Positions 5,169-39,601 of a stretch of DNA of 64,000 nucleotides are shown one piece after another; position 1 is the first letter of the stretch, and each line of letters starts with the position of its first letter. Both the position numbers and the translations under genes were made by a program. Origin of the DNA: Obrimoposthia wandeli (lineage: Eukaryota); NCBI GenBank assembly GCA_977020255.1, contig CDROCS010001760.1, positions 62,001 through 126,000 on the forward strand, given 5' to 3'. The notes under the pieces were generated by a model, which saw only the letters and a program-made list of their open reading frames with translations, was not told the origin of the DNA and did no database searches.

Positions 5169-6452
5169 ATGAAGTTAAGTTTACAGCAACAAATTTACTT
5201 TTTTACGTTAAGTAGTTGCTTGTTTTTTATTTTATTGGTGTTCAGTACTTTATGGTCAATTCAAGTCCTGGAAGTTGCTTTAGAAAGAGAGCGCTATGCC
5301 AATAAAGTCGAGAACCATACTAATATTTTAAAGCAATTCATTAGCAGTGAAGATATTTATGCTGAAGATTACAATACGGACGATTGGTTAGCTTTAGAGC
5401 GAAGGTTCTCGAGCTTACTCAAACTCACGCCAAATTTGACAGCGCAACAGCAAACCATTCAAAACAGTATAGAAAGTCAAAATAAGAATGTACTGCGTCT
5501 ATTTAATGCCATAAATAAAAACAAATTAAAAAATGCTAATGACAGTATTAAAAAGCATTTGAAAGTCAGGCTAATAACACAGCTTGAGGCCATAAAATCT
5601 GATTCAATACAGCTTTATACGATTGTGCAAAAAGATATTAATCGTATTGTTAGGCAACAAATTATAATTATTTTATCTGTTTTGGCTTTTAGTCTTTTTA
5701 TTTTGCTTTATGGTGGTTTTAAGTTAAGTAAAGTATTTAGAACATCGCTGAATGAAGTTAAATTAGCCTTTTCAAAAAACCGCAGTGGTAGTTTTCAAAA
5801 GATAGAGCTTTCAATTGCGTCTGAAGAATTTGAAAGTATCGCTAATGCTTTTAATGATATGAATAAAGAGTTGAGTGAAACGACAATATCTTTGGAGTCG
5901 ATGACAAAAATTGTTGCTGAAAGAACAAAGGTATTAGAGCAGTTATCTAATACCGACCCGTTAACTAAAGTCGCCAATCGTCGGGCATTATTTGAACGAG
6001 GTCATGCTGAATTTTCTCGCGTTCAAAGAAGTAAAAACCCCTTTACGGTGATTTTACTCGATTGTGATTTATTTAAGGCGATAAACGACGATTTTGGTCA
6101 TTTATTTGGTGATGAAGTACTGAAGCATATTTGTAAAATATGTACTGAGGAAATACGTAATATTGATTTTTTTGCTCGCTATGGTGGTGAAGAATTTATC
6201 ATTATTCTACCTAATAGTGAGGTGAATGGTGCTATAAAAACAGCTGAACGTATCCAGTGTTCTCTGGTTAATAATAGTATTGAATTTGAAGGCAAAGAGA
6301 TCCCTGTTACTTTAAGTATGGGAATTTGTACTCTTAATGAAAAGCACACTAATTTTGAACAGTTAATAAAGGATGCTGATGCTGCCATGTATAAAGCCAA
6401 GGAGAATGGCCGAAATAGGATCGAAGTTGCAGATAACGAATTAGATATTTAA
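5169..6452 (+). CDS. Membrane-bound diguanylate cyclase (two TM helices, HAMP-like linker, GGDEF)
   Basis: TDPLTKVANRR, RNID I-site, RYGGEEF, ADAAMYKAKENGRNR. Confidence 0.92.
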   Translation: MKLSLQQQIYFFTLSSCLFFILLVFSTLWSIQVLEVALERERYANKVENHTNILKQFISSEDIYAEDYNTDDWLALERRFSSLLKLTPNLTAQQQTIQNSIESQNKNVLRLFNAINKNKLKNANDSIKKHLKVRLITQLEAIKSDSIQLYTIVQKDINRIVRQQIIIILSVLAFSLFILLYGGFKLSKVFRTSLNEVKLAFSKNRSGSFQKIELSIASEEFESIANAFNDMNKELSETTISLESMTKIVAERTKVLEQLSNTDPLTKVANRRALFERGHAEFSRVQRSKNPFTVILLDCDLFKAINDDFGHLFGDEVLKHICKICTEEIRNIDFFARYGGEEFIIILPNSEVNGAIKTAERIQCSLVNNSIEFEGKEIPVTLSMGICTLNEKHTNFEQLIKDADAAMYKAKENGRNRIEVADNELDI

Positions 6453-28481: not shown

Positions 28482-29714
28482 GTGGTGGAACAAGTTTCAG
28501 GATTAAAAATAAGAAAACAAGCCAACTGGCTAGATAAACGTTGTCGTGGCCTAGTTTTTTCAGTTTTAGCAAAACTTGAGTATGGGCAAATTGAATTGGT
28601 TGATAATGGCGAACGCTTTCTCTTTCCCGAGTTTGTCGAAAACAATTCCTTGCTCGGTCGTATTAATATACATGATGCAAGCGTCTACCGTGACTTTGTT
28701 AAAGGTGGCAGTATCGGCGCAGCAGAAGCTTTTATTGCCGGTAAATGGAGTAGTCCTGATCTTACGATTGTTATTCGTATTTTTGCCCGTGCTCAGCAGC
28801 AAACTGATGCGCTTGAACAGAAAAAACCTTGGTTAACTAAGCTTAAATACGCCGTGTTACACAGCCGTAATCGTAACAGCCAAGCTGGTTCTAAAAAGAA
28901 CATTCTGGCGCATTATGATCTAGGTAATGAGCTTTACAGTCGTTTTCTTGATCCTGAAATGATGTATTCATCGGCTATCTATCCTGATCAGCAAGCGAGC
29001 TTAGCACAAGCACAGTTACATAAAATGTCGACCATTTGTGAAAGTTTAGACTTAACTGCAGACGACCATTTACTGGAAATAGGTACAGGTTGGGGTGGCT
29101 TAGCCATTTATGCGGCGCAGCAATATGGTTGTAAGGTTACTACAACCACCATTTCTGACGCCCAGCATGCCTACGCTAAAAATCGTATTGAGCAGTTAGG
29201 CTTAACAGATAAAATAACACTCTTAAAGAAAGACTACCGAGAACTCACCGGCGAGTACGACAAGTTAGTGTCAATCGAAATGATTGAAGCGGTTGGTTTT
29301 GAATACCTACCAAGCTTTTTTAAACAGTGTAATGCAAGGTTAAAACCGGGTGGCAAGTTACTGATCCAGTCAATTACTATTGCCGATCAGCGTTTTGAGC
29401 ATTACAAACGCAATGTTGATTTTATTCAACGTTACATTTTCCCAGGCGGTTTTTTACCTTCAGTGACGGTGCTGACTAAGCACTTGACTGAATATACCGA
29501 TTTAATCACTGAGTCAGTGAGTGATATCGGCTTAGATTATGCTAAAACATTGGCACACTGGCGTGAAGCTTTTTTAACTTCTTGGCCTGAACTAACACCC
29601 TTAGGTTATGACGAGCAGTTTAAGCGCTTATGGCTTTATTACTTTGCTTATTGTGAAGGTGCTTTTATTGAGCGCTCAACCAGTACGGTACATTTAGTGG
29701 CGAGAAAATCGTAA
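28482..29714 (+). CDS. cfa: CFA-synthase family fatty-acid methyltransferase (UfaM-like candidate)
   Basis: NILAHYDLGNE, MYSSA, LEIGTGWG, SIEMIEAVG, YIFPGG, YCEGAF. Confidence 0.9.
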   Translation: MVEQVSGLKIRKQANWLDKRCRGLVFSVLAKLEYGQIELVDNGERFLFPEFVENNSLLGRINIHDASVYRDFVKGGSIGAAEAFIAGKWSSPDLTIVIRIFARAQQQTDALEQKKPWLTKLKYAVLHSRNRNSQAGSKKNILAHYDLGNELYSRFLDPEMMYSSAIYPDQQASLAQAQLHKMSTICESLDLTADDHLLEIGTGWGGLAIYAAQQYGCKVTTTTISDAQHAYAKNRIEQLGLTDKITLLKKDYRELTGEYDKLVSIEMIEAVGFEYLPSFFKQCNARLKPGGKLLIQSITIADQRFEHYKRNVDFIQRYIFPGGFLPSVTVLTKHLTEYTDLITESVSDIGLDYAKTLAHWREAFLTSWPELTPLGYDEQFKRLWLYYFAYCEGAFIERSTSTVHLVARKS

Positions 29715-29834
29715 CAATAAATGATTAGCGGTTATTGATGAGCACTATCAATTGAAACTTTTCGTTAAAACTAACGATTAAAGATAAATTAGCAAGCCGA
29801 ACTTAGGTTGATGAAGCTAAATTCGGCTTAAACA

Positions 29835-31982
29835 TTAGTTTAATTTTTGCTGTTTTTGTTCGTTCAGTAGCTTAATAAAATGATCTAATTTTACAGGTCG
29901 GCTGAAGACATAACCTTGTACCGAATTACATTTATTTCTGACCAGAAAGCTTAACTGTTCTTCGGTTTCTACACCTTCTGCCGTAACGCAAAGATTTAAG
30001 TTATGTGCCATGGCAATCACGGCACGTACTATCGCTTTATCGTTATCATCAGTAACAATTTCTTTAATAAATGATCGATCAATTTTCAAATAATCTAAAG
30101 GTAGTTTCTTCAAATATGACAATGAACTATAACCGGTACCAAAATCATCAACCGATACGCTCATACCAATCATTCTGACTTTACTCAGTAGTTTTTCAGC
30201 TATTGAGTAATCATCAACGAGTAGATCTTCAGTGACTTCTAGTTCCAATAAGCACGGATTAACGTCGTTGTCTTTAATACAAGCGCGCAGATGAGAGAAT
30301 AGCTTTTCATCGCTGACTTGGGTTGGTGAAAGGTTCATGGATATTTTAATGTCAAAACCTAATGCACTGATTTTTTTTGATATTTGACAAGTGCGACGAA
30401 TAACCCACTCTCCGATAGCAACAATTAAACCGCTCTTTTCTGCGACCGGAATGAAATCGTTAGGGCTAATCAAGCCTTTTTCTGGGTGGTTCCAACGGAT
30501 TAATGCTTCAGCTTTATTGATGCAATTAGTTTTTATATCGATGATGGGTTGTAAATACAATTCGAATTCGTTGTTTGTTAACGCTAGTTTTAAATCTTGC
30601 TCTAATTTTATTAAATTATGCGAATCATCTTTCATTGATTTTGAGTAAAACAAGACAGAATTCTGTTTTTTTTGTTTACCGTTATAAGCACTCAAGTCAA
30701 CGAACTTCATTAATTCTTCCACACTTTGTGCGTCATGAGGAAAGTTAGCAGCACCGATACTAACGCTGATATGAAAATCTTCGGCTTTACTGGTGTAGAA
30801 CGGCTTATTGATATTGTCTATGATGCGTTGTATTGCGGATTCACAGCCGACTTGGTTATCAATGTTATTAAGAATAATGGCAAATTCATCACCGCCAACT
30901 CGAGCGATAAAATCTGAGGTTTTAATGACGCTACTGATGCGGTTACTCAGTTCTACTAACAGTTTGTCGCCTTCTTCATGGCCATAGAATTCGTTATGCT
31001 GCCTGAAGTTATTGATATCTACATACAGTAAATAAAAGGGTTGGCTTGATGTCACATGCCCTTCTAAGGTTTGCCAAAAAGAAAACCTATTTGGTCGCCC
31101 AGTTAGCATGTCTTGTAAAGCCAGTTGCTCATTGCGCTGTACTAGATGTTTTATCTTGCTGATGTCATTAGCAAATATGATCCAGTTTTCTACTTCGTTG
31201 AGTTTATTTTTTACCGGGTAAAAGCCAATTTTTAGCCATTTTAATGTCGCTGGCGGCAAAATCCAACATAACTCACCATCCCAACTTGAATTGGTTGATA
31301 ATATTCGTTCATATTCGGGAAGCTGATTTTTCATCAGATCGATGATGATATCGATTGGTCGAGTCGTTTGCGCATTCATCATTTTATTTTGCTCAAAAAG
31401 ACTCAGTGCCGCTGAATTTTCAATACTGGTGGTAAAATCACTGCTGGCAATTAATACCGCAAACTCGGCATTTTCAATTACTTTGGCCAATGTAGCTAAT
31501 ACATTACTTTGTTCGGGCGAGTTTTTTAGAATAGACAGTAAACGGGTATGTAAGTATTCATTTTTCAGAAAAAGTCGATCGTAGGATAGTAAAACCTCAC
31601 GTGCGAGCTGTTTGGTTTTTTGCTGAAGAGTAAAGTTTTCTAATTGATTCGCAATCACTAAAAGGTTTTGTTGATCATACTTGATTGCGATAGCTTCTAA
31701 GTGCAATTCTTTATTATTACTGGTGATTTCGGTCCATAAACCTGAGCGTAACTTTCCATTACTTGCTTCATGCCATATCAATCTGGCATCGATAAGAAAA
31801 TCGAGTAAGAAAGGTGTGTCTTCGTTAATCAGAAAACTTTCTTGATTGATAGCTTGCGGGAAAAGATCTTTTATCCATGCACTATCGCCTTCAAGCAACT
31901 TTATGCTGCCTTTGTCTATGTCGATTACTTCGAGTACAACTTGCTCTAAGGCATTTAAAACTTTATTTAGTAGTGACGTCAC
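29835..31982 (-). CDS. GGDEF-EAL protein with uncharacterised N-terminal region and a PAS-like segment
   Basis: RVGGDEF, AEALIRW, DDFGTGYSSL, AEGVET; GTG start with GAGGT RBS, overlapping the GTPase gene by 20 nt. Confidence 0.92.
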   Translation of the reverse strand: MTSLLNKVLNALEQVVLEVIDIDKGSIKLLEGDSAWIKDLFPQAINQESFLINEDTPFLLDFLIDARLIWHEASNGKLRSGLWTEITSNNKELHLEAIAIKYDQQNLLVIANQLENFTLQQKTKQLAREVLLSYDRLFLKNEYLHTRLLSILKNSPEQSNVLATLAKVIENAEFAVLIASSDFTTSIENSAALSLFEQNKMMNAQTTRPIDIIIDLMKNQLPEYERILSTNSSWDGELCWILPPATLKWLKIGFYPVKNKLNEVENWIIFANDISKIKHLVQRNEQLALQDMLTGRPNRFSFWQTLEGHVTSSQPFYLLYVDINNFRQHNEFYGHEEGDKLLVELSNRISSVIKTSDFIARVGGDEFAIILNNIDNQVGCESAIQRIIDNINKPFYTSKAEDFHISVSIGAANFPHDAQSVEELMKFVDLSAYNGKQKKQNSVLFYSKSMKDDSHNLIKLEQDLKLALTNNEFELYLQPIIDIKTNCINKAEALIRWNHPEKGLISPNDFIPVAEKSGLIVAIGEWVIRRTCQISKKISALGFDIKISMNLSPTQVSDEKLFSHLRACIKDNDVNPCLLELEVTEDLLVDDYSIAEKLLSKVRMIGMSVSVDDFGTGYSSLSYLKKLPLDYLKIDRSFIKEIVTDDNDKAIVRAVIAMAHNLNLCVTAEGVETEEQLSFLVRNKCNSVQGYVFSRPVKLDHFIKLLNEQKQQKLN

Positions 31983-32481
31983 CGCTTGTGCACCTCAACA
32001 ATAGTTTAGCCATCGTTAAAAACATTTCTTCTACATTTTCACCTGTCTTAGCGCTGGTGGAAAATTGCAGGTCAAATAAATTTTTGTAGATTTCGTTTTC
32101 ACTGTTATCTAAATGCCAAGTTGCGGGTAAATCACTTTTATTTATCGCTAATATGGCAGGGCAATCGGTGACTTGTCGTGCGAGGGTATTAATGTCGATG
32201 CCTTCAAGCAAGGATGACGCTCGCGTTTGATCGACTACAATAATGTACCCTGATGCACCGCGTAAGTATCGCTCTTGAAAAACATTGTAACTATCATTAC
32301 CTTCCATATCCCATAACATGAACTGGACTTCGTCGTTTTCGATGGTGATAGTTTTTTTGTCAATTTTAACGCCAATAGTGGTGAGATATTTTTCACTAAA
32401 AATACCTTGCACATACTGTTTGACCAGACTTGTTTTTCCTACGCTGGATGCGCCTAAAAGGCATATTTTTTTCTGAATCAC
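31963..32481 (-). CDS. Rab/Ras-like small GTPase (Rup-type)
   Basis: G1 GASSVGKTS, G2 YLTTIGV, G3 WDMEG, G4 NKSD, G5 SAK; single domain of 172 aa. Confidence 0.92.
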   Translation of the reverse strand: MIQKKICLLGASSVGKTSLVKQYVQGIFSEKYLTTIGVKIDKKTITIENDEVQFMLWDMEGNDSYNVFQERYLRGASGYIIVVDQTRASSLLEGIDINTLARQVTDCPAILAINKSDLPATWHLDNSENEIYKNLFDLQFSTSAKTGENVEEMFLTMAKLLLRCTSGDVTTK

Positions 32482-32558
32482 AGCTTCACCTCCATATTTG
32501 ACCGCTACGCTCTATTAAAATACTACGCTTATTTACGATAGAGTCACTCTATAATTTT

Positions 32559-34319
32559 TTACTCATGATTAATGTATATCACGTTAAACATTACAGTTCT
32601 TGCCGTACTGCTAATGCCAACAATATCTATTTGCCCTAAACCTAAAACATACATTTTATTTCGATCTAGACCTTTGTCTCTTAAAATGTCAGCACTGTTA
32701 TTGGCTCTTTTCATACTGAGAATATCGTTAGTTGCTTTATTACCCGTGCTATCACTGCTGCCCATAATTAATAAACCAAAATTAATATTAAGAGCATCAG
32801 CAAGCTGTTCTAATTGTTGTATGTATTGAAAGAGTCGCTGTAAAGACAATTGCATTTCAGGCGTAATATCTTCACTTGCGACAGAAAAATTTAATTGGAT
32901 TGATGCTATACGGCCAATGAGGTCGTCAAATAACGCCTGTTTAACTTGCTCGCTTGTGGTTAAAGATACGGGTGTTGTCTGTTGTAATTTTTCGGTGAGT
33001 AAGTTTCTATCTTGAGTAAACCCGGCAATGGTTAAGTTTGTGATTAATTGTTCAGTCTCAGTAATGCCTAGTGTACCAAAAAGGCTGAGTACATCGTCTT
33101 GCCAAGCTAAGTTAACACTGGGGAATTTTTTTATAATACGTTGAGCACGCAGTTGTAATATTTGTCGATCAAATGAATGAAAGTTACGTTCGGTGAGTTT
33201 TAACTGTGTTGTATCTACGCCATTACTTTCCAACCAGTCGGTAATGTCTAAGGCGTCAGGGTCTCGCAAAACATCTAAACTTATATCATTGAAGTTAGCA
33301 ATATTGAGTTGCTTTACGATGACACCTGGCTGAGCATCTAAGAGCATTATTTTTTCATGCAACTGTGAGCTCTTCAACCAATTAAAACTTTGGTAGCCAG
33401 CGTAAATAGAGATGATAACAACGATTGCCCAAGCAAACCAAGGACGTTTTTTCTTGCTGTTTTTTTCAGTTTTTTCTTCTGATAAAAGGCAGTCTCGCAA
33501 CAAGCTATCGGAGGCGGAAAAATATTGATTGTCACCATCAAAGTTATTCAACTCGTCATGATATAAGCTATGTATGTTTTCTAGTGTCAACTGTAGTTGA
33601 TCGTTTATTCGTTGTGGCGGGTTACCGATAATGGCAGCAACAACCAAAGCACTAGGACCTGGCTTAATTAACAAATTAAAGTTGTCGGTACTAACCGATT
33701 GAAGTTGTTCTTTTTGCCCTTCGTGGCTCGGTGAAAACGAATCACCAACAAAGTCATTAATCGCCGTTAACATGGCTGATACAATATCAGCGTCACTGTT
33801 ATCTTTGTTATCCAATGCGATGGTATTTAATAATAGCCCGGTTTCTCTGTGGATTAAAAAAACATGTTCAACACGATAAGCGAAGGTTTGTGAGGCGGCA
33901 TATTGCGCATAGCTAACACCGCTGCGTCGTGCTTCAAAGCGCCACTTTAAGCCTTTTATGGTTAAACTGTTTTCGAGTAACTGATTAGTTTTTTCCATAA
34001 AGTCGCTGAGAAAAGCAGCAACAGATTTTCTCACCAAACTACCCACCAGCGGGTATAGCGAACTGACCATTTGTTCACTATTATGGGCTACTGAGTTTTT
34101 AACTGAGTCTTCGACGAATGGCTGTAGTACTTTATTAACAGAGTTATCTTTTTTTTGCCTATCATGTAGTGCTTCAGTAATGACATCAGCGACTATATTG
34201 CGCGCATCTTTTTTTATGCACTCTGTTATTCTGCGGTTTTCTTGCCCCAGTATTAGTGAGCGTACTTGTTCTAGTTGTTGCTCTGACTCAGCATGTTCCG
34301 CTGTAGTATCAGTTGGCAT
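32559..34319 (-). CDS. Bitopic membrane protein: cytoplasmic domain, TM helix, periplasmic region, C-terminal OmpA-like domain
   Basis: TM PWFAWAIVVIISIYAGY; OmpA motif GSSDSTG...NDILSMKRA; TAATG coupling to the upstream gene. Confidence 0.8.
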   Translation of the reverse strand: MPTDTTAEHAESEQQLEQVRSLILGQENRRITECIKKDARNIVADVITEALHDRQKKDNSVNKVLQPFVEDSVKNSVAHNSEQMVSSLYPLVGSLVRKSVAAFLSDFMEKTNQLLENSLTIKGLKWRFEARRSGVSYAQYAASQTFAYRVEHVFLIHRETGLLLNTIALDNKDNSDADIVSAMLTAINDFVGDSFSPSHEGQKEQLQSVSTDNFNLLIKPGPSALVVAAIIGNPPQRINDQLQLTLENIHSLYHDELNNFDGDNQYFSASDSLLRDCLLSEEKTEKNSKKKRPWFAWAIVVIISIYAGYQSFNWLKSSQLHEKIMLLDAQPGVIVKQLNIANFNDISLDVLRDPDALDITDWLESNGVDTTQLKLTERNFHSFDRQILQLRAQRIIKKFPSVNLAWQDDVLSLFGTLGITETEQLITNLTIAGFTQDRNLLTEKLQQTTPVSLTTSEQVKQALFDDLIGRIASIQLNFSVASEDITPEMQLSLQRLFQYIQQLEQLADALNINFGLLIMGSSDSTGNKATNDILSMKRANNSADILRDKGLDRNKMYVLGLGQIDIVGISSTARTVMFNVIYINHE

Positions 34320-34864
34320 TATAGTTGGTCATCTTCTAAATTTGTTGCCATCGTTGCGAGTAATTTAGCGAGTGTTTTTCTATCGGTTTTCGATGAGGTT
34401 AAATCTTTTGAAACAGATTCAAGGTGAGTTTTTAATTGTGCAAGCTGATCATTGAAGTTACGGGTAAGCGACTGACTCTCACTGTCTAATGCTTGTTCTA
34501 TATTTTTAAAGTCTTGCTGAGTAACGCTAACAAACATTTCGTGTTCTGAGGTTAAACTAGTGAGGTTTTTTTCAATCGCAGTTTCATTATCTTCATGGCT
34601 TTTATCTGAACGTTGTATTTGCTGTTCTATCTCAGCAAAGCGTTCGCTAATATTATCTTGCATTTTGTCTAGACGATCGGTGAAGTTAATATTTTGCGTG
34701 TTAAGCGCTTGTTCCATGTCGTTGCGCGTTGAAATAATCTGTTTTTTAAGTTGCTGCTCAGCTACGCCAAAAACAATCTGCCGTAATTGATCTAGCTCAT
34801 TGACAGGGGCTGTGTCTTCTTCGGGAGATTTTTTGATATTTTTATGATTAGGCATCGACGACAT
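34319..34864 (-). CDS. Coiled-coil hypothetical protein
   Basis: Heptad-rich Q/E/L composition; C-terminal KTDRKTLAKLL; stop codon overlaps the next start. Confidence 0.75.
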   Translation of the reverse strand: MSSMPNHKNIKKSPEEDTAPVNELDQLRQIVFGVAEQQLKKQIISTRNDMEQALNTQNINFTDRLDKMQDNISERFAEIEQQIQRSDKSHEDNETAIEKNLTSLTSEHEMFVSVTQQDFKNIEQALDSESQSLTRNFNDQLAQLKTHLESVSKDLTSSKTDRKTLAKLLATMATNLEDDQL

Positions 34865-35185: not shown

Positions 35186-35213
35186 AAAAAAAAGCCTCAA
35201 CGCTTGTTGAGGC
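35186..35213 (-). terminator. Rho-independent terminator of the hmu-like operon
   Basis: Minus strand GCCTCAAC-AAGC-GTTGAGGC followed by T8. Confidence 0.8.
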
Positions 35214-35266
35214 CTTGGTTTTTAAACCACGATAAATAGCATGTATTCGTACCAATGTTGTCGTTA

Positions 35267-38200
35267 TTATTTATTGTTGATAATAAAACCATGGTTTTTA
35301 TTTGGTTTTCTGTTCCTACTTTGCCAAACTGCTCCACAGGCTATTAATAACAAAATGCCCGTTAAGCTATAATAGATGAAGTGGTTCGGCTCTACAGTTT
35401 GTGCGCTTTGTTTTTCCAACTTTTGTCCTTCAACTTGCTGCTCGGTTTTAGTTTCTGCAGCAGAATCGTCATTTGGCTTCGCATTATGATCAGCAAGTTG
35501 TTGGTTGTTCATTGCTTGCTGTGCTTTAGCGCTAGCGGCCATAGCTTCTAAAGTTTTTGCGGCCAGTGGCGCTAAACCAAAACCTTCGGCGAGTTCATTT
35601 ACATGGGCTTTTACCGCATCATTTAGAATGACTAAGTCATTGTTATTCACCACATCAATATATTGCTCAACAAGTTGTTTTAAACGCTCAGGGTCTGTTT
35701 GCCAATAGTCTTTACGTTCTGCTTCTAGCATGCGTTCCATCATACGGGCAAAGGCAGCGGGGTTAATGTCTTTAAACCATTCGTTGAGCTTCAGGTCGAG
35801 TTTGTCATTAACATAAATGTCTAGGTACTCATCCCATTGATCGTTTCTGATCAGGTTAGGATCAACCACTTGCCAGCCAAAAAAGTTATCCATTTTCGAC
35901 GCTAATGATACAGCACCAGAATAACCTTCTTTTTGTAACTCTTTTATCCAGCGAGGATGAAACATGCGAGTACGTAATTCTTTGGCAAGGAATAAACCTG
36001 CATCTTCGGCTTTGGCATTTTTAGCGTCACGCAAGTTGGCGATGACCATGTCAGGACTTTTACCATCAATGTTACGTACCGCTAAACTGAGTGCGCCAAA
36101 GTATTCAAACGGATCATCAGTACTTAACATACCAAATAGGTTTGACGAGCGAGCAAACATGGCGATGTCAGTGCCTGATAATTGTTTGGCGTAAAGTTGT
36201 ACTTCTTTACCGTCAGTATTTGCCGCTTTTTGTCCCCAACGGCTATTGTCAGCACCGAAGAAGTAGCCCATTTTACCCAGGTAAGTATCTGATATTTTTT
36301 TATCAGTTTCCCAAGTATCACTAGCCCATGCAGCGTCATCAACCCCTGTACCATAATCACCTGATTGATTTGAAAAAAGACGAATAGTTGATAAATACTC
36401 TGCTTCCTTCTCTTCGACACCTTCGGCCAGTAAGTCTGCTTTTACTTTTTCACTATTTTGCCAAATCGAGTTGTTGTCTTCTTTTAATGCCGCGACCTGA
36501 TTGACCGCTTTTGCTAGCATTTGCATGACATTAGGAAAAGCATCACGGTATAGACCTGTGGCTGACACCACGACATCTATACGTGGGCGCTTTAATTCGC
36601 TGTAAGGAATGATTTCGGTGCCAATAACTCGACCACTTTTACTCCATTTTGGTTTAACGCCCATGGCGTATAATACTTGAGATTCAAGTACCCCGTAGTG
36701 ACGCATAGTTTCAATTGACCATAACGAGAAGGCCATTTTGTCAGGGTAACGTTGATGCTTTTGGTAGTAATTAGCGATCATTTGTTCTGTGAGTTCTTTA
36801 CCTTGCTCGTAAGCTGCTTGGGTAGGAACGCGAGCAGGGTTAAAGCCAAACAGGTTATAGCCAGTTGCTAAAGATTCAGGGTGGCGTATTGGATCGCCAC
36901 CTGATTTAACGGGGATATATGTAGCACTCAAAAAATCAACCATGGCATCTAGCTCATGAATGCTAGCCATACTTTGATAAAGCTTTTGGCCGCGTGCAAT
37001 ATCCGCTTGCAGCTCGGTTGTTAGCTCTGTAAATGGCACTGGGCGCTGGGCTGATTGATCGTCAGCAGCGGTAATGTAGTTTTTAACGGTTAAATAACCT
37101 GATAAGCGAGTAATGTCGTTTTCTGTCGATGTATCTAAACCCTGCTTGGCATTATTTTCATCATTACCTTTACCATTTCCTTCAGCATGATTTTTCTCAT
37201 GGCCTTTCTCATGGTAAGTATGACTATGATTATCGCGGTCATCTTCATTATTTTCACCCGTTAAGCTAGTAGAGTAATATTGATGCTCAAACTCACTGGC
37301 CCTAGCAGTAAAGTCGCTACCTAGCATTTGTACTAAGGTTGAAATGGTCAGTGGCTGCTCTGGAATATAACCAAAGGTATGTAAACCTAATGGCTGATTA
37401 GCCGTTGCTAACGCTTCTAAGTGAATATGCAAGGCGTCGATAAACTCGTCAAACGCTTGGTCAATTTGCGCTTGTTCCCACGCTAGGTCTTTACAAATAT
37501 TGGTGTCAAAACATAACTGAGTTAATTGCACGGCCGTTTTTTGTTTTACGCCGCCTTGATCGAGTTGTTTATATTGATGCATTAATTCATGGAGATTTCG
37601 AATCTCACCTTCTAACCCAGCAGCAGCAAAAGGCGGGGTCATATGTGAAATAACTGTTGCACGTCCACGTCGTTTGGTTTGCATGGCTTCACCAACATCA
37701 TCAACAATAAATGGGTATACCACGGGCGTATCCCAAACCGCTAAATTACCTTGGTCATAGATAGATAAACCTCGTTCTTTTCCGCCTAAATACTCTTGTG
37801 AACCGTGGGTACCTAAATGTACTATCGCGTCTGACTGCCAGTATTCGCGGGCATAATAGTACGCGGCTAAGTAGAAATGATTGATGGGTACTAAACCTTG
37901 ATGATAAATCATATTCTCGTCATTTTTATCATCAGATCGAGGAGGCTGGCGCATGATCAGCATATTGCCGTTGCGAATGCGTGGCAGGATAAAAAAGTGC
38001 TTACCGTCTTTTTCTACCGCCATAAAATTGTCTTGTGGTTGCCCCCAATGGTCAGTTATTTTTTGCGTTAATTCAGTTGGCAGGGCATTAAACCAACTTA
38101 AATAGTCGTCAATTGGCATTAATTCGGCCAAGTCATGATCTAGCAATTCGGTTAATTGATAATCACGGTAGAACGGGTCGAGAATTTTCTTGGCGTTGGC

Positions 38201-39601
38201 AACAAAATATTCTGCATCACGTTCTGCGGTTTTGTAGCCTTCATTAGCTAAGCGCTGACTAATGGCTTCAATACTTTCAGGAATATTCATAAATGACGCA
38301 CCAACATCTTTGTCGCCCCAAACAAATACCGTTAATTTTTTATCTTGGTTGGCTTTATATTTTAAGTTAACGACATTAATCGCTTTATTTACTAGATGCT
38401 CGAGTTGGTAGTCGATAACTTCAACATTTTGGTCACTCATATTCATCGCGGCTACAATCATAGGATCAATCACGCCGGCGTTTTCTGGTAACACTAAAGT
38501 GAATGACATCATATTGGCGCTGACGCCTTGCATATCAGCTTCCCATGTTTCTTTATCACCAGAATAATAAGTCATTGCTTGCATGACAGGCACATTGAAT
38601 TTTTCAAACTCGACTTTACGTTGATTAGCCCAATGAATGTTACGAAAGTTGATGATCAAATCAACATCGGTTTCTTTATTCGGCTCTTGGCCATTAATCT
38701 GCCCAACAACCTGGCCATCTTTAGTGATTGGTAGTTGTAGCAAATGGCTATAGTCGCTGGTAACAGGACTTAGTTTAAAAAAGAAGGGGACAACGTAAGC
38801 ACCTTTGGCTTCTAGCTGGGCGATGGTGGCATCAATTAATTGCGTTTGCTCAGACTCTATTAATGCGCGTTGCATTAATATCGCTATTTTAGGTTGTTGC
38901 GGTTTAACTGGGCGGCGTTTTTTATATTCGGCTAAATCTTTGATAATAACATCGGGCAATGTTGGGTGATAAATGCCTTGGTGTGGAAAAATAATAGGCG
39001 CGGGCACTTTACTGGCGCCGGCGGTTTTACTAACATCAGAAGCTGTTGAGTTTGCTCGCGATGACACTGCTTGCGTTGCAGCTTCTTGCTGTTGGGTGCT
39101 AAAATTTTCTGCAATGTAGGACAGCATATTATCGAGATTACGACGGCCAGCGTTCATCCAATAATCTTCTAAAGTACTGGCATTATCAGCGCTTAACGCT
39201 TTATTGAGTTTAGCGTTTTGTAAATATTTAAAAGCAACGACGGCAGAATTTACTTGGCTGATTGCTTCGGCGTAGTTATCAAAAGCGGCACTGGCTTCTC
39301 GCACTGATACGGCATCGAGAATGACTAAATCATATTGATTAAACAAGCTGACCAGTGTGCTTTTTTGGTTAGTCGCGTCGAGCAATGACTTTGCTGACTT
39401 TTGTTGGATATGCCAAGTTGTGGCTGTTTTTTCTTTTGCGAGCTTTTTTAATAGCGATATTTTTGCCGTATTCGCATGAGCTGTGCTGATAAATAACACA
39501 CGATGTTTGGTGCTGTTTTCTGCCGCGGTGGCGAAAGCGTTATATAAAATACTGACGAAGCCGAGCAAAATTACGGCCAATGTGATTAATTTTTTTTTCA
39601 T
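35267..39601 (-). CDS. CobN/BchH-like chelatase-family protein with signal peptide and C-terminal TM anchor (HmuS/BtuS-like)
   Basis: HLGTHGSQEYLGGK, YPFIVDDVGEAMQTKRRG, RPRIDVVVSATGLYRD, ELRTRMFHPRWI; N-terminal leader and C-terminal hydrophobic helix with basic tail. Confidence 0.88.
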   Translation of the reverse strand: MKKKLITLAVILLGFVSILYNAFATAAENSTKHRVLFISTAHANTAKISLLKKLAKEKTATTWHIQQKSAKSLLDATNQKSTLVSLFNQYDLVILDAVSVREASAAFDNYAEAISQVNSAVVAFKYLQNAKLNKALSADNASTLEDYWMNAGRRNLDNMLSYIAENFSTQQQEAATQAVSSRANSTASDVSKTAGASKVPAPIIFPHQGIYHPTLPDVIIKDLAEYKKRRPVKPQQPKIAILMQRALIESEQTQLIDATIAQLEAKGAYVVPFFFKLSPVTSDYSHLLQLPITKDGQVVGQINGQEPNKETDVDLIINFRNIHWANQRKVEFEKFNVPVMQAMTYYSGDKETWEADMQGVSANMMSFTLVLPENAGVIDPMIVAAMNMSDQNVEVIDYQLEHLVNKAINVVNLKYKANQDKKLTVFVWGDKDVGASFMNIPESIEAISQRLANEGYKTAERDAEYFVANAKKILDPFYRDYQLTELLDHDLAELMPIDDYLSWFNALPTELTQKITDHWGQPQDNFMAVEKDGKHFFILPRIRNGNMLIMRQPPRSDDKNDENMIYHQGLVPINHFYLAAYYYAREYWQSDAIVHLGTHGSQEYLGGKERGLSIYDQGNLAVWDTPVVYPFIVDDVGEAMQTKRRGRATVISHMTPPFAAAGLEGEIRNLHELMHQYKQLDQGGVKQKTAVQLTQLCFDTNICKDLAWEQAQIDQAFDEFIDALHIHLEALATANQPLGLHTFGYIPEQPLTISTLVQMLGSDFTARASEFEHQYYSTSLTGENNEDDRDNHSHTYHEKGHEKNHAEGNGKGNDENNAKQGLDTSTENDITRLSGYLTVKNYITAADDQSAQRPVPFTELTTELQADIARGQKLYQSMASIHELDAMVDFLSATYIPVKSGGDPIRHPESLATGYNLFGFNPARVPTQAAYEQGKELTEQMIANYYQKHQRYPDKMAFSLWSIETMRHYGVLESQVLYAMGVKPKWSKSGRVIGTEIIPYSELKRPRIDVVVSATGLYRDAFPNVMQMLAKAVNQVAALKEDNNSIWQNSEKVKADLLAEGVEEKEAEYLSTIRLFSNQSGDYGTGVDDAAWASDTWETDKKISDTYLGKMGYFFGADNSRWGQKAANTDGKEVQLYAKQLSGTDIAMFARSSNLFGMLSTDDPFEYFGALSLAVRNIDGKSPDMVIANLRDAKNAKAEDAGLFLAKELRTRMFHPRWIKELQKEGYSGAVSLASKMDNFFGWQVVDPNLIRNDQWDEYLDIYVNDKLDLKLNEWFKDINPAAFARMMERMLEAERKDYWQTDPERLKQLVEQYIDVVNNNDLVILNDAVKAHVNELAEGFGLAPLAAKTLEAMAASAKAQQAMNNQQLADHNAKPNDDSAAETKTEQQVEGQKLEKQSAQTVEPNHFIYYSLTGILLLIACGAVWQSRNRKPNKNHGFIINNK

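What the first reader, a model, noticed from the sequence alone, without database searches (positions are those of the whole stretch)
29835..34864. Four-gene module coupling a Rab-like GTPase to a peptidoglycan-anchored membrane protein and a c-di-GMP enzyme
Seen: four co-directional genes, with a TAATG overlap (genes 1-2), a 77-nt gap (genes 2-3) and a 20-nt overlap (genes 3-4). They encode a coiled-coil protein, a TM+OmpA-domain protein, a 172-aa GTPase with all G1-G5 motifs and a Rab-like TIGV effector loop, and a GGDEF-EAL protein with both catalytic motifs intact. Known: prokaryotic Rup-family Ras GTPases are described from genomics but, to my knowledge, have no experimentally defined function, unlike MglA. 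Inference: a spatially anchored GTPase switch controlling local c-di-GMP turnover.
Basis: partly seen in the sequence, partly recalled or inferred. Interest (0 to 1): 0.88.

Follow-up and report, generated by a model that had tools for sequence, protein, structure and literature searches.

The report
Known bacterial Ras-like GTPase signalling operon
This is a real four-gene operon that couples a small Ras-like GTPase to a cell-wall-anchored membrane protein and a c-di-GMP enzyme, but the same gene set was described from genomes in 2014 as the "Group 1 Rup" system, whose function I found no experimental test of.

Summary
There are four co-directional minus-strand genes with the stated overlaps. 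They encode a coiled-coil protein, a TM + OmpA-domain protein, a 172-aa Ras-like GTPase and a GGDEF-EAL protein.

The module is strongly conserved. In 80 related loci from many phyla, the GTPase lies directly downstream of the OmpA-protein gene in 72 of 76 loci with room for it. The coiled-coil gene lies directly upstream in 80 of 80.

It is not new. Wuichet & Søgaard-Andersen (2014, PMC4316618) described this neighbourhood as the Group 1 Rup system. [quoted passage not shown] Both features are met here. Six literature searches found no experimental study.

- The "unknown" cytoplasmic domain of the OmpA protein is predicted to be longin-like, the fold of Rab GEF platforms and close to the MglB roadblock fold.
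- The output protein's N-terminal domain is PAS-like, with a conserved Q/R pair on its exit helix.
- The output is interchangeable (histidine kinases, HD, PP2C, cyclases, GGDEF/EAL), so the trio is a generic transducer and not specific to c-di-GMP.

The parts
34319..34864 (-). g1: 181-aa cytoplasmic coiled-coil protein (DUFY of the Group 1 Rup system). Conserved N-terminal LDxxRxI(L/V)FG motif and C-terminal K(T)DRxxLA motif.
   Evidence: ORF. No Pfam or Atlas family. A homologue lies directly upstream of the g2 homologue in 80/80 loci (jackhmmer). Invariant F32, G33 and K159; R28 and D161 at 90% or more (A7).
32559..34319 (-). g2: 586-aa bitopic membrane protein (DUFX:OmpA of the Group 1 Rup system).
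   Evidence: ORF. Homologues in Colwellia, Thalassomonas and Thalassotalea. The cytoplasmic region matches 3586 representatives of 50%-identity clusters. AF2 model with mean pLDDT 86.
33966..34304 (-). g2 residues 6-118: two long cytoplasmic helices. The N-terminal LxxVRxLxLG motif resembles the one in g1.
   Evidence: DSSP of the model (pLDDT about 70). hhalign of A7 against A2 gives a 25-column match, E 1.3e-3, probability 18%: weak.
33468..33911 (-). g2 residues about 137-284: predicted longin-like (longin/roadblock) domain, a candidate GTPase platform acting as GEF or GAP.
33372..33437 (-). g2 transmembrane helix (about residues 295-316). It has no acidic residue.
   Evidence: Hydrophobic stretch WFAWAIVVIISIYAGYQSF. 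Helix 294-325 in the model.
33027..33323 (-). g2 residues 333-431: two small periplasmic alpha/beta domains of unknown family.
   Evidence: Model pLDDT above 90. No Pfam hit. No match to this stretch among the 50 listed structural matches.
32568..32951 (-). g2 residues 457-584: OmpA-like peptidoglycan-binding domain.
31963..32481 (-). g3: 172-aa single-domain Ras-superfamily GTPase (Rup Group 1 type). The catalytic Gln is replaced by Asn62. No C-terminal Cys motif.
   Evidence: Pfam Ras E 5e-30. Nearest solved structures are Rab35 and Rab5, E about 1e-22. G1-G5 are conserved in 73 sequences; position 62 is E/I/N/R/A.
29835..31982 (-). g4: 715-aa output protein, with a PAS-like N-domain, a signalling helix, a second PAS-like region, GGDEF and EAL.
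   Evidence: ORF. Pfam GGDEF and EAL. The N-terminal region is specific to syntenic orthologues.
31644..31982 (-). g4 residues 1-113: Rup-system-specific PAS-like domain (g4N).
31524..31643 (-). g4 residues 114-153: long exit helix carrying the LQxAR(E/D) motif. Q125 matches the 'invariant glutamine' of Wuichet & Søgaard-Andersen; R128 is equally conserved.
   Evidence: Helix 114-153. Q125 and R128 are invariant within Alteromonadales (A1) and at least 90% conserved across phyla (A4).
31143..31505 (-). g4 residues about 160-280: second sensor-like region, probably PAS. This is inferred.
   Evidence: No Pfam hit in the window protein. A homologue, P0315, carries PF13426 PAS_9, though where in that protein is not on record. 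Conserved block in A1.
30660..31121 (-). g4 GGDEF domain (residues 288-441). The GGDEF motif is intact. The I-site is KxxD, not RxxD.
   Evidence: Pfam. Motif counts in 115 orthologues: GGDEF in 100, and almost all lack RxxD.
29895..30599 (-). g4 EAL domain (residues 462-696). EAL and DDFGTG are intact.
   Evidence: Pfam E 1e-73. DDFGTG in 115/115 orthologues and EALIR in 99/115.
35191..35216 (-). Intrinsic terminator of the upstream CobN-like gene. It marks the 5' boundary of the operon.
   Evidence: 11-bp stem followed by a T run.
29795..29828 (-). Hairpin just after the g4 stop codon, a possible operon terminator.
   Evidence: Read directly from the sequence: AGCCGAATTTAG...CTAAGTTCGGCT. 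The consensus scan did not call it, because no clean T run follows.

Best explanation
The locus is a Colwelliaceae member of the published Group 1 Rup system, a four-protein signalling module of the inner membrane.

**Proposed mechanism.** Only the first step rests on data; the rest is inferred.
1. g2 spans the inner membrane. Its OmpA-like domain holds the peptidoglycan, and its cytoplasmic longin-like domain serves as the docking and regulatory platform (GEF or GAP) for the Rup GTPase g3. This is likely as a dimer and together with the coiled-coil protein g1.
2. g3 lacks its own catalytic Gln, as Rap does, so it stays GTP-bound until a partner supplies a catalytic residue.
3. GTP-bound g3 binds the PAS-like N-domain of g4. 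That domain's exit helix carries the conserved Q125/R128 pair. The helix passes the signal to the GGDEF-EAL part and changes c-di-GMP turnover. The EAL phosphodiesterase is the more strictly conserved half.
4. The Q/R pair, or residues of the longin domain, then complete GTP hydrolysis and reset the switch.

In other phyla the same g1-g2-g3 trio is wired to kinases, phosphatases or cyclases. It is therefore a generic envelope-linked transducer, with c-di-GMP as the output in this lineage.
For: **Gene order**
- Of 78 loci with an intact g2 ORF, 72 of the 76 with room have the GTPase directly downstream. These loci span Gammaproteobacteria, Gemmatimonadota, Acidobacteriota, Nostocales, Alphaproteobacteria, Myxococcota/Desulfobacterota and others.
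- g1 homologues lie directly upstream in 80/80 loci.
- The g4N domain is present in the output proteins of 49 loci.

**Published description**
- The four components, the missing G3 Gln and the invariant Gln in the output N-terminus are all in PMC4316618.
- Its Table S2 lists Glaciecola, Marinomonas, Alteromonas and P. atlantica members. Relatives from those genera are among my syntenic loci.

**Fold predictions**
- g4N is PAS-like, with Q125/R128 on the exit helix.

**GTPase features**
- G1-G5 are invariant.
- Position 62 is never a conserved Gln.

**Peptidoglycan binding**
- The OmpA-like domain keeps D523 and R538.

**Established knowledge (my own, not tested here)**
- Longin and roadblock domains are recurrent platforms and GEFs or GAPs for small GTPases (abstract of PMC3747258).
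- Rap lacks Gln61, and its GAP supplies an Asn in trans.
Against: - No interaction, nucleotide-binding or localisation data exist. A shared fold does not show function.
- The direction of signal flow is not determined.
- Q125/R128 sit on a PAS exit helix. Conservation there could reflect signal transmission or dimerisation and not catalysis.
- About a third of the systems have outputs without g4N, such as PP2C phosphatases and cyclases.
- Two related loci (L033, L045) keep g1, g2 and a g4N-GGDEF-EAL output but have no GTPase gene. g2 and the output may therefore work together without the GTPase.
- The models are AlphaFold predictions. The longin assignment comes from a 586-residue model that was not searched domain by domain.
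Confidence: 0.6

Rival explanations
1. Signal flows the other way. The PAS domains of g4 sense a cytoplasmic cue and control the nucleotide state of g3. The GTPase is then the output, as proposed for the actinobacterial conservon, and acts through g2/g1 on the envelope, for example on peptidoglycan anchoring or on recruiting envelope proteins.
For: Wuichet & Søgaard-Andersen propose the GTPase as the output of the analogous conservon. The protein carrying g4N has sensor-type PAS folds. The conserved Q/R on g4N would fit a GAP acting on g3.
Against: The variable partner carries classic output enzymes (kinase, cyclase, phosphatase, DGC/PDE), while g1-g2-g3 are constant. That is the usual pattern of a constant input or transducer with swapped outputs. 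g2 has no recognisable enzymatic or effector domain beyond peptidoglycan binding.
Confidence: 0.15
2. It is a polarity or positioning module like MglA/MglB. The GTPase cycle mainly decides where in the cell the output enzyme sits (pole, septum), giving local c-di-GMP pools.
For: g2 is fixed to the wall by an OmpA-like domain with intact binding residues. It has a longin/roadblock-type domain like the one in the MglA regulator MglB. The coiled-coil partner could act as a scaffold.
Against: Nothing in the sequence indicates a polar or septal address. The system occurs in filamentous cyanobacteria and many non-motile lineages, with outputs unrelated to motility. Allosteric control and localisation are not mutually exclusive.
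Confidence: 0.15
3. The genes are neighbours without a shared function. Alternatively g2 is a MotB- or ZorB-like stator or defence component and the GTPase is incidental.
For: Some databases name g2 homologues 'flagellar motor protein MotB'. Structural matches include the MotB, PomB and ZorB peptidoglycan-binding domains. g1 has a weak PADLOC hit to the ZorA tail, E 5e-4.
Against: There is no MotA/ZorA-type channel gene in the operon, and the g2 TM helix has no acidic residue. g2, g3 and g4 have no PADLOC hit. Synteny of g1-g2-g3 across many phyla, with 72/76 and 80/80 adjacency, argues against chance. The matches to MotB and ZorB cover only the generic OmpA-like domain.
Confidence: 0.03

Closest known systems
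Group 1 Rup system (Wuichet & Søgaard-Andersen 2014, Genome Biol Evol 7:57; PMC4316618)
   Same: All defining parts are shared. These are a single-domain Rup GTPase without the G3 Gln, an upstream coiled-coil protein (DUFY), DUFX-TM-OmpA, and an output DGC/PDE with an N-terminal region carrying a conserved Gln. The gene order is the same as in the listed Glaciecola, Marinomonas and P. atlantica members.
   Different: The 2014 table lists no Colwellia.
MglA/MglB polarity switch of Myxococcus xanthus
   Same: A bacterial Ras-superfamily GTPase is paired with a regulator from the roadblock/longin structural class. It links to other signalling systems.
   Different: g3 has the canonical Asp in DxxG, where MglA has Thr (PMC3000849 abstract). 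The regulator domain here is fused to a wall-anchored membrane protein and is not a free MglB. Partners and outputs differ.
Actinobacterial conservon (CvnA-D; Mfp in mycobacteria)
   Same: [quoted passage not shown] It is proposed to form a membrane-associated complex.
   Different: Its GTPase is of the MglA group, not Rup. Its roadblock protein is free-standing. It has no OmpA anchor, coiled-coil protein or g4N domain.
Eukaryotic Rab GTPases with longin-domain GEFs (Mon1-Ccz1, TRAPP, DENN, CPLANE)
   Same: The nearest solved structures to g3 are Rab35, Rab5 and Rab1, and g3 has a TIGV switch I. The g2 domain matches longin domains of the Rab GEFs Mon1-Ccz1, TRAPP and CPLANE.
   Different: g3 has no prenylation motif and no catalytic Gln. 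Sequence identity to longin domains is only 5-19% across the listed matches. GEF activity is untested. The context is bacterial signal transduction, not vesicle traffic.
Rap / RapGAP (own knowledge, not tested here)
   Same: The GTPase lacks the switch II Gln, so catalysis probably needs a residue supplied in trans.
   Different: No RapGAP-like domain is present. The candidate donor (Q125/R128 of g4, or the longin domain) is hypothetical.

Membership tests
Group 1 Rup system | Single-domain Ras-superfamily GTPase with G1-G5 | tested here: met
   172 aa, Pfam Ras E 5e-30. G1-G5 are conserved in 73 sequences.
Group 1 Rup system | No catalytic glutamine after DxxG in G3 | tested here: met
   WDMEGN, with Asn62 aligned to the Gln of Rab35. 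Across the family the position is E28/I10/N8/R7/A6.
Group 1 Rup system | Adjacent gene for a cytoplasmic coiled-coil protein (DUFY) | tested here: met
   g1 lies directly upstream with a TAATG overlap. A homologue holds the same position in 80/80 loci. The coiled-coil character is inferred from composition and weak Pfam hits, and was not tested with a dedicated predictor.
Group 1 Rup system | Adjacent gene for DUFX + inner-membrane helix + OmpA domain | tested here: met
   This is the g2 architecture. The GTPase is directly downstream in 72/76 loci.
Group 1 Rup system | Adjacent output protein (DGC/PDE or histidine kinase) whose N-terminal region holds an invariant Gln | tested here: met
   g4 is GGDEF-EAL. 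Q125 is invariant in A1 and at least 90% conserved across phyla in A4.
Group 1 Rup system | Falls in the Rup Group 1 clade in a tree with MglA, Rup2 and eukaryotic references | not tested
Indirect support comes from syntenic relatives in genera listed as Group 1 in Table S2: Glaciecola, Paraglaciecola and Marinomonas.
MglA family | Thr in place of the conserved Asp of the G3 DxxG motif | tested here: not met
   D58 is invariant in 73 sequences. The feature is as stated in the PMC3000849 abstract.
Roco (Roc-COR) proteins | Roc GTPase domain embedded in a large multidomain protein with COR | tested here: not met
   The ORF is 172 aa and bounded by its own SD/start and stop. Pfam Ras scores above Roc, 104.6 against 85.3 bits.
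Eukaryotic Rab family | C-terminal Cys prenylation motif and catalytic Gln in switch II | tested here: not met
   The C-terminus is ...RCTSGDVTTK, and family C-termini have no terminal Cys motif. Asn62 replaces the Gln. The database name 'Rab family GTPase' reflects similarity only.
MotB/PomB/ZorB stator subunits | Conserved acidic residue in the TM helix and a MotA/ZorA-type partner gene | tested here: not met
   The TM helix has no Asp or Glu. No MotA-like gene is in the operon. g2 has no PADLOC hit.
OmpA-like peptidoglycan-binding domains | Fold plus the conserved Asp and Arg that bind the peptide stem | tested here: met
Longin / roadblock GTPase-platform domains | beta2-alpha-beta3-alpha2 sandwich fold; binding to and regulating a small GTPase | tested here: inconclusive
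Bifunctional GGDEF-EAL enzymes | Intact GG(D/E)EF, EAL and DDFGTG motifs | tested here: met
   The motifs are present and conserved in orthologues. All NCBIfam equivalog scores are below cut-off, so it is not DibA, DosP or another named enzyme.

The most novel reading that the evidence does not exclude
The 'DUFX' domain of the OmpA protein may be a genuine bacterial longin-domain regulator (GEF or GAP) of a Rab-like GTPase, tethered to the cell wall. The pairing of a Ras/Rab-like GTPase with a longin platform, a hallmark of eukaryotic membrane traffic, would then exist as a widespread bacterial signalling device that reads the envelope and drives interchangeable second-messenger or phosphorylation outputs. 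In that case the conserved Q125/R128 on the output's PAS exit helix would act as a trans catalytic pair, making the effector also the GAP.
Probability: 0.3. Interest if true: 0.7.

Novelty: already known. Interest (0 to 1): 0.38.

Why it matters
Rup GTPases are the bacterial Ras-superfamily group that clusters with eukaryotic Rab/Ras/Rho/Ran (bioRxiv 10.1101/2024.02.28.582541). I found no experimentally characterised member. The system is widespread: the g2 cytoplasmic region alone matches 3586 representatives of 50%-identity clusters, and 562 stretches were confirmed in a collection holding one genome per species.

Working out one member would define a new mode of bacterial signal transduction, a G-protein relay between the envelope and c-di-GMP, kinase, phosphatase or cyclase outputs. 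It would also bear on how old the GTPase-longin partnership is. This particular locus adds no new kind of system. Its value is as a clean, compact example in marine Colwelliaceae, now with testable fold-based hypotheses.

Tried and rejected
1. **Anti-phage defence (Zorya-like).** PADLOC gave no hit for g2, g3 or g4, and only a weak match of g1 to the ZorA tail, E 5e-4. Rejected.
2. **MotB-type stator.** There is no acidic TM residue and no MotA partner. Rejected.
3. **Roc fragment or MglA.** Rejected on architecture and on the G3 motif.
4. **Foldseek of the full g2 model against the PDB.** It returned only OmpA-like matches and said nothing about the cytoplasmic domain. The VIA wide search was needed.
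5. **Homology between g1 and the N-terminal helices of g2.** Only a 25-column motif match was found, at probability 18%. Left as a lead.
6. **Expression evidence.** One marine metatranscriptome holds 90-95% similar fragments of g1-g3 at low depth. DNA carry-over cannot be excluded, and no contig bridges the gene junctions. Not informative on co-transcription.
7. **Literature.** Six searches found no experimental work on Rup systems and no prior longin assignment for DUFX. The library holds open-access papers only, so absence is not proof.
9. **Pairwise complex models.** The structure tool folds single chains only.
10. **Protein Atlas search for g1.** It returned only unnamed 'hypothetical protein' clusters.
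Full report
**1.

ORF listing and the sequence itself show four co-directional genes on the minus strand:
- g1, 34864..34319, 181 aa
- g2, 34319..32559, 586 aa
- g3, 32481..31963, 172 aa, GTG start preceded by GGAGG
- g4, 31982..29835, 715 aa, GTG start

A strong intrinsic terminator ends the upstream CobN-like gene at 35216-35191. A hairpin follows the g4 stop codon at 29828-29795. The four genes therefore look like one operon, although the simple scan called no promoter upstream of g1.

Domain assignments:
- Pfam assigns OmpA to g2 residues 478-566, Ras to g3 (E 5e-30, ahead of Roc and Arf), and GGDEF plus EAL to g4. g1 gets only the weak hits typical of coiled coils.
- NCBIfam equivalog scores for g4 are all far below cut-off, so it is not one of the named c-di-GMP enzymes.
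- The G1-G5 motifs and the TIGV switch I of g3 are present.
- GGDEF, EAL and DDFGTG in g4 are intact.

**2. The genes are a conserved unit**

Homologues of g3, g2 and the N-terminal region of g4 occur in the same set of Colwellia, Cognaticolwellia, Thalassomonas, Thalassotalea and Shewanella genomes. In several cases their longest contigs have the same length, as expected if they lie on the same contigs.

The cytoplasmic part of g2 (residues 1-290) matches 3586 representatives of 50%-identity clusters at E up to 1e-3. It returned 80 loci from:
- Alteromonadales, Marinomonas and Thiotrichales
- Gemmatimonadota, Acidobacteriota and Armatimonadota
- Nostocales, Alphaproteobacteria and Myxococcota/Desulfobacterota
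- Binatia and Ghiorsea

In these loci:
- 78 have an intact g2 ORF.
- 72 of the 76 with enough flank have a g3-type GTPase starting within a few dozen bases of the g2 stop.
- All 80 have exactly one g1-family ORF, and it lies immediately upstream of g2.
- 72 have a further gene after the GTPase.

**3. The module is already in the literature**

Wuichet & Søgaard-Andersen (2014, PMC4316618) divided prokaryotic Ras-superfamily GTPases into MglA and Rup families. [quoted passage not shown]
- a coiled-coil cytoplasmic protein
- a protein with a domain of unknown function followed by an inner-membrane helix and an OmpA domain

They noted that this glutamine is noteworthy because Group 1 Rup lacks the catalytic G3 glutamine. 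They proposed a signalling complex analogous to the actinobacterial conservon.

Their Table S2 lists Alteromonas, Glaciecola, Marinomonas mediterranea and Pseudoalteromonas atlantica T6c with the order DUFY>OmpA:DUFX>Rup>. Paraglaciecola, Glaciecola and Marinomonas loci are among my fully syntenic relatives (L010-L022).

Each defining feature was tested here and met:
- g3 has Asn62 where Rab35 has the catalytic Gln.
- Across 73 family members that position is E/I/N/R/A, while G1-G5 are invariant.
- Q125 of g4 is invariant in Alteromonadales and at least 90% conserved across phyla.

The window's operon is thus a Colwelliaceae member of a described kind.

Six full-text searches found no experimental study of a Rup system. 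The 2014 paper itself says that none had been characterised. A 2024 preprint still treats Rup1 only as a phylogenetic group that clusters with Rab/Ras/Rho/Ran.

**4. What the parts look like**

*g2.* An AlphaFold model built on 78 homologues (mean pLDDT 86) shows:
- two long N-terminal helices (residues 6-118)
- an alpha/beta domain (about 137-284)
- a TM helix (294-325)
- two small periplasmic alpha/beta domains (333-431)
- an OmpA-like domain (457-584)

A search that does not depend on Foldseek matched residues about 140-284 to longin domains:

The order of strands and helices is that of a longin domain. The best-conserved motifs of the family lie in this domain. The 2014 paper called it a domain of unknown function. 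Two earlier notes of this scan proposed the same fold from sequence alone.

The conserved LQxAR(E/D) motif, with Q125 and R128, lies on the exit helix. That is where PAS sensors pass signals to downstream domains.

The EAL half is more strictly conserved than the GGDEF half. DDFGTG is present in 115/115 orthologues and GGDEF in 100/115. The allosteric I-site is KxxD, not RxxD.

*g1.* It is a real family and not generic coiled coil. F32, G33 and K159 are invariant, and R28 and D161 are at 90% or more, within the motifs LDxxRxILFG and KTDRxxLA. It has no Pfam or Atlas family. The N-terminus of g2 carries a similar LxxLRxLLxG motif, but the profile match is short and weak.

**5. The output is interchangeable**

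Pfam scans of the gene after the GTPase in 48 loci outside Alteromonadales gave:

| Class of output protein | Domains found |
|---|---|
| With g4N (25 proteins) | HATPase_c in 17, seven of them hybrid kinases with receiver and Hpt; HD_5 in 4; GGDEF in 3; EAL in 2 |
| Without detectable g4N (23 proteins) | PP2C/SpoIIE in 7-8; PAS in 8; class III cyclase in 5; one GAF kinase |

A second conserved domain of about 130 aa follows the GTPase in 25 loci. It is a separate gene in Nostocales, fused to the output elsewhere, and fused ahead of g4N in two loci.

The constant part is g1-g2-g3 and the enzyme is swapped. This is why I read the trio as a transducer, with c-di-GMP as the lineage-specific output.

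**6. Most likely mechanism**

What the data show is the architecture, the conservation, the folds (as predictions), the missing catalytic Gln and the conserved Q/R pair. The following steps are inferred:
- g2, fixed to the wall, presents a longin platform that loads or unloads g3.
- g3-GTP engages the PAS-like domain of g4 and changes DGC/PDE activity through the exit helix.
- Hydrolysis needs a residue supplied in trans, as Rap needs its GAP (my own knowledge). That residue would come from Q125/R128 or from the longin domain.

I put about 0.75 on the four proteins forming one signalling pathway. I put about 0.45 on the specific direction g2 to g3 to g4.

Points against this reading:
- No interaction data exist.
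- Outputs without g4N exist.
- L033 and L045 keep g1, g2 and a g4N-GGDEF-EAL output but have no GTPase gene, and in them the residue aligned with Q125 is Lys. This is compatible with a link between that Gln and the GTPase, but these are only two closely related loci.
- Conservation on a PAS exit helix can have reasons other than catalysis.

**7. Verdict**

The kind of system was already described, and its function is still open. The fold assignments and the wider range of outputs are modest additions. They make the published hypothesis more concrete and easier to test.

Noticed in passing
L055:8245-8646 (+); also L058, L060-L062, L069 and L074. Fused forms occur in L026, L030-L032, L035, L037, L038, L040, L044, L046, L051, L053, L066 (split over two ORFs), L067, L076 and L077. 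L041 and L079 carry it ahead of g4N.: A second conserved domain of about 130 aa sits immediately after the Rup GTPase in 25 loci. It is a stand-alone fifth gene in Nostocales. Elsewhere it is fused to the N-terminus of the output protein, which in these classes carries PAS, cyclase or GAF-kinase domains. In two loci it is fused ahead of the g4N domain. It is absent from the window's own operon.
   Followed up: partly
L033:5333-9597 and L045:4816-9085: Two related gammaproteobacterial or Thiotrichales MAG loci keep the coiled-coil gene, the OmpA-protein gene and a g4N-GGDEF-EAL output, but have no GTPase gene; the gap is only 34-36 nt. In both, the residue aligned with Q125 is Lys.
   Followed up: partly
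L029:2838-3452 (-) and L048:2101-2724 (-): In two Deltaproteobacteria/Desulfobacterales MAG loci the only GTPase hit lies upstream on the opposite strand. It is about 205 aa and scores weaker. This may be a rearranged variant or an unrelated small GTPase.
   Followed up: no
window 34750-34790 (g1 residues 26-38) and 34230-34270 (g2 residues 17-30): g1 and g2 both start with a similar L(D/E)xxRx(I/L)(L/V)xG motif. The profile-profile match is 25 columns, E 1.3e-3, probability 18%. It could be a shared docking motif.
   Followed up: partly
window 35267-39601 (-): The gene upstream of the operon encodes a 1444-aa CobN/Mg-chelatase-family protein (Pfam E 2.8e-282). It is separated from the Rup operon by a strong terminator.
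   Followed up: no
window 28482-29714 (+): A convergent neighbour downstream of the operon is a cyclopropane-fatty-acyl-phospholipid-synthase-type methyltransferase (Pfam CMAS E 3.6e-79).
   Followed up: no
window 5937-6422: A second, unrelated GGDEF-domain coding stretch lies elsewhere in the window (28% identity to the g4 GGDEF domain by tblastn).
   Followed up: no
window 33027-33323 (g2 residues 333-431): Two confidently modelled small periplasmic alpha/beta domains lie between the TM helix and the OmpA-like domain. They have no Pfam hit, and no match to them was among the 50 listed structural matches. They are a possible sensing or spacer region.
   Followed up: no
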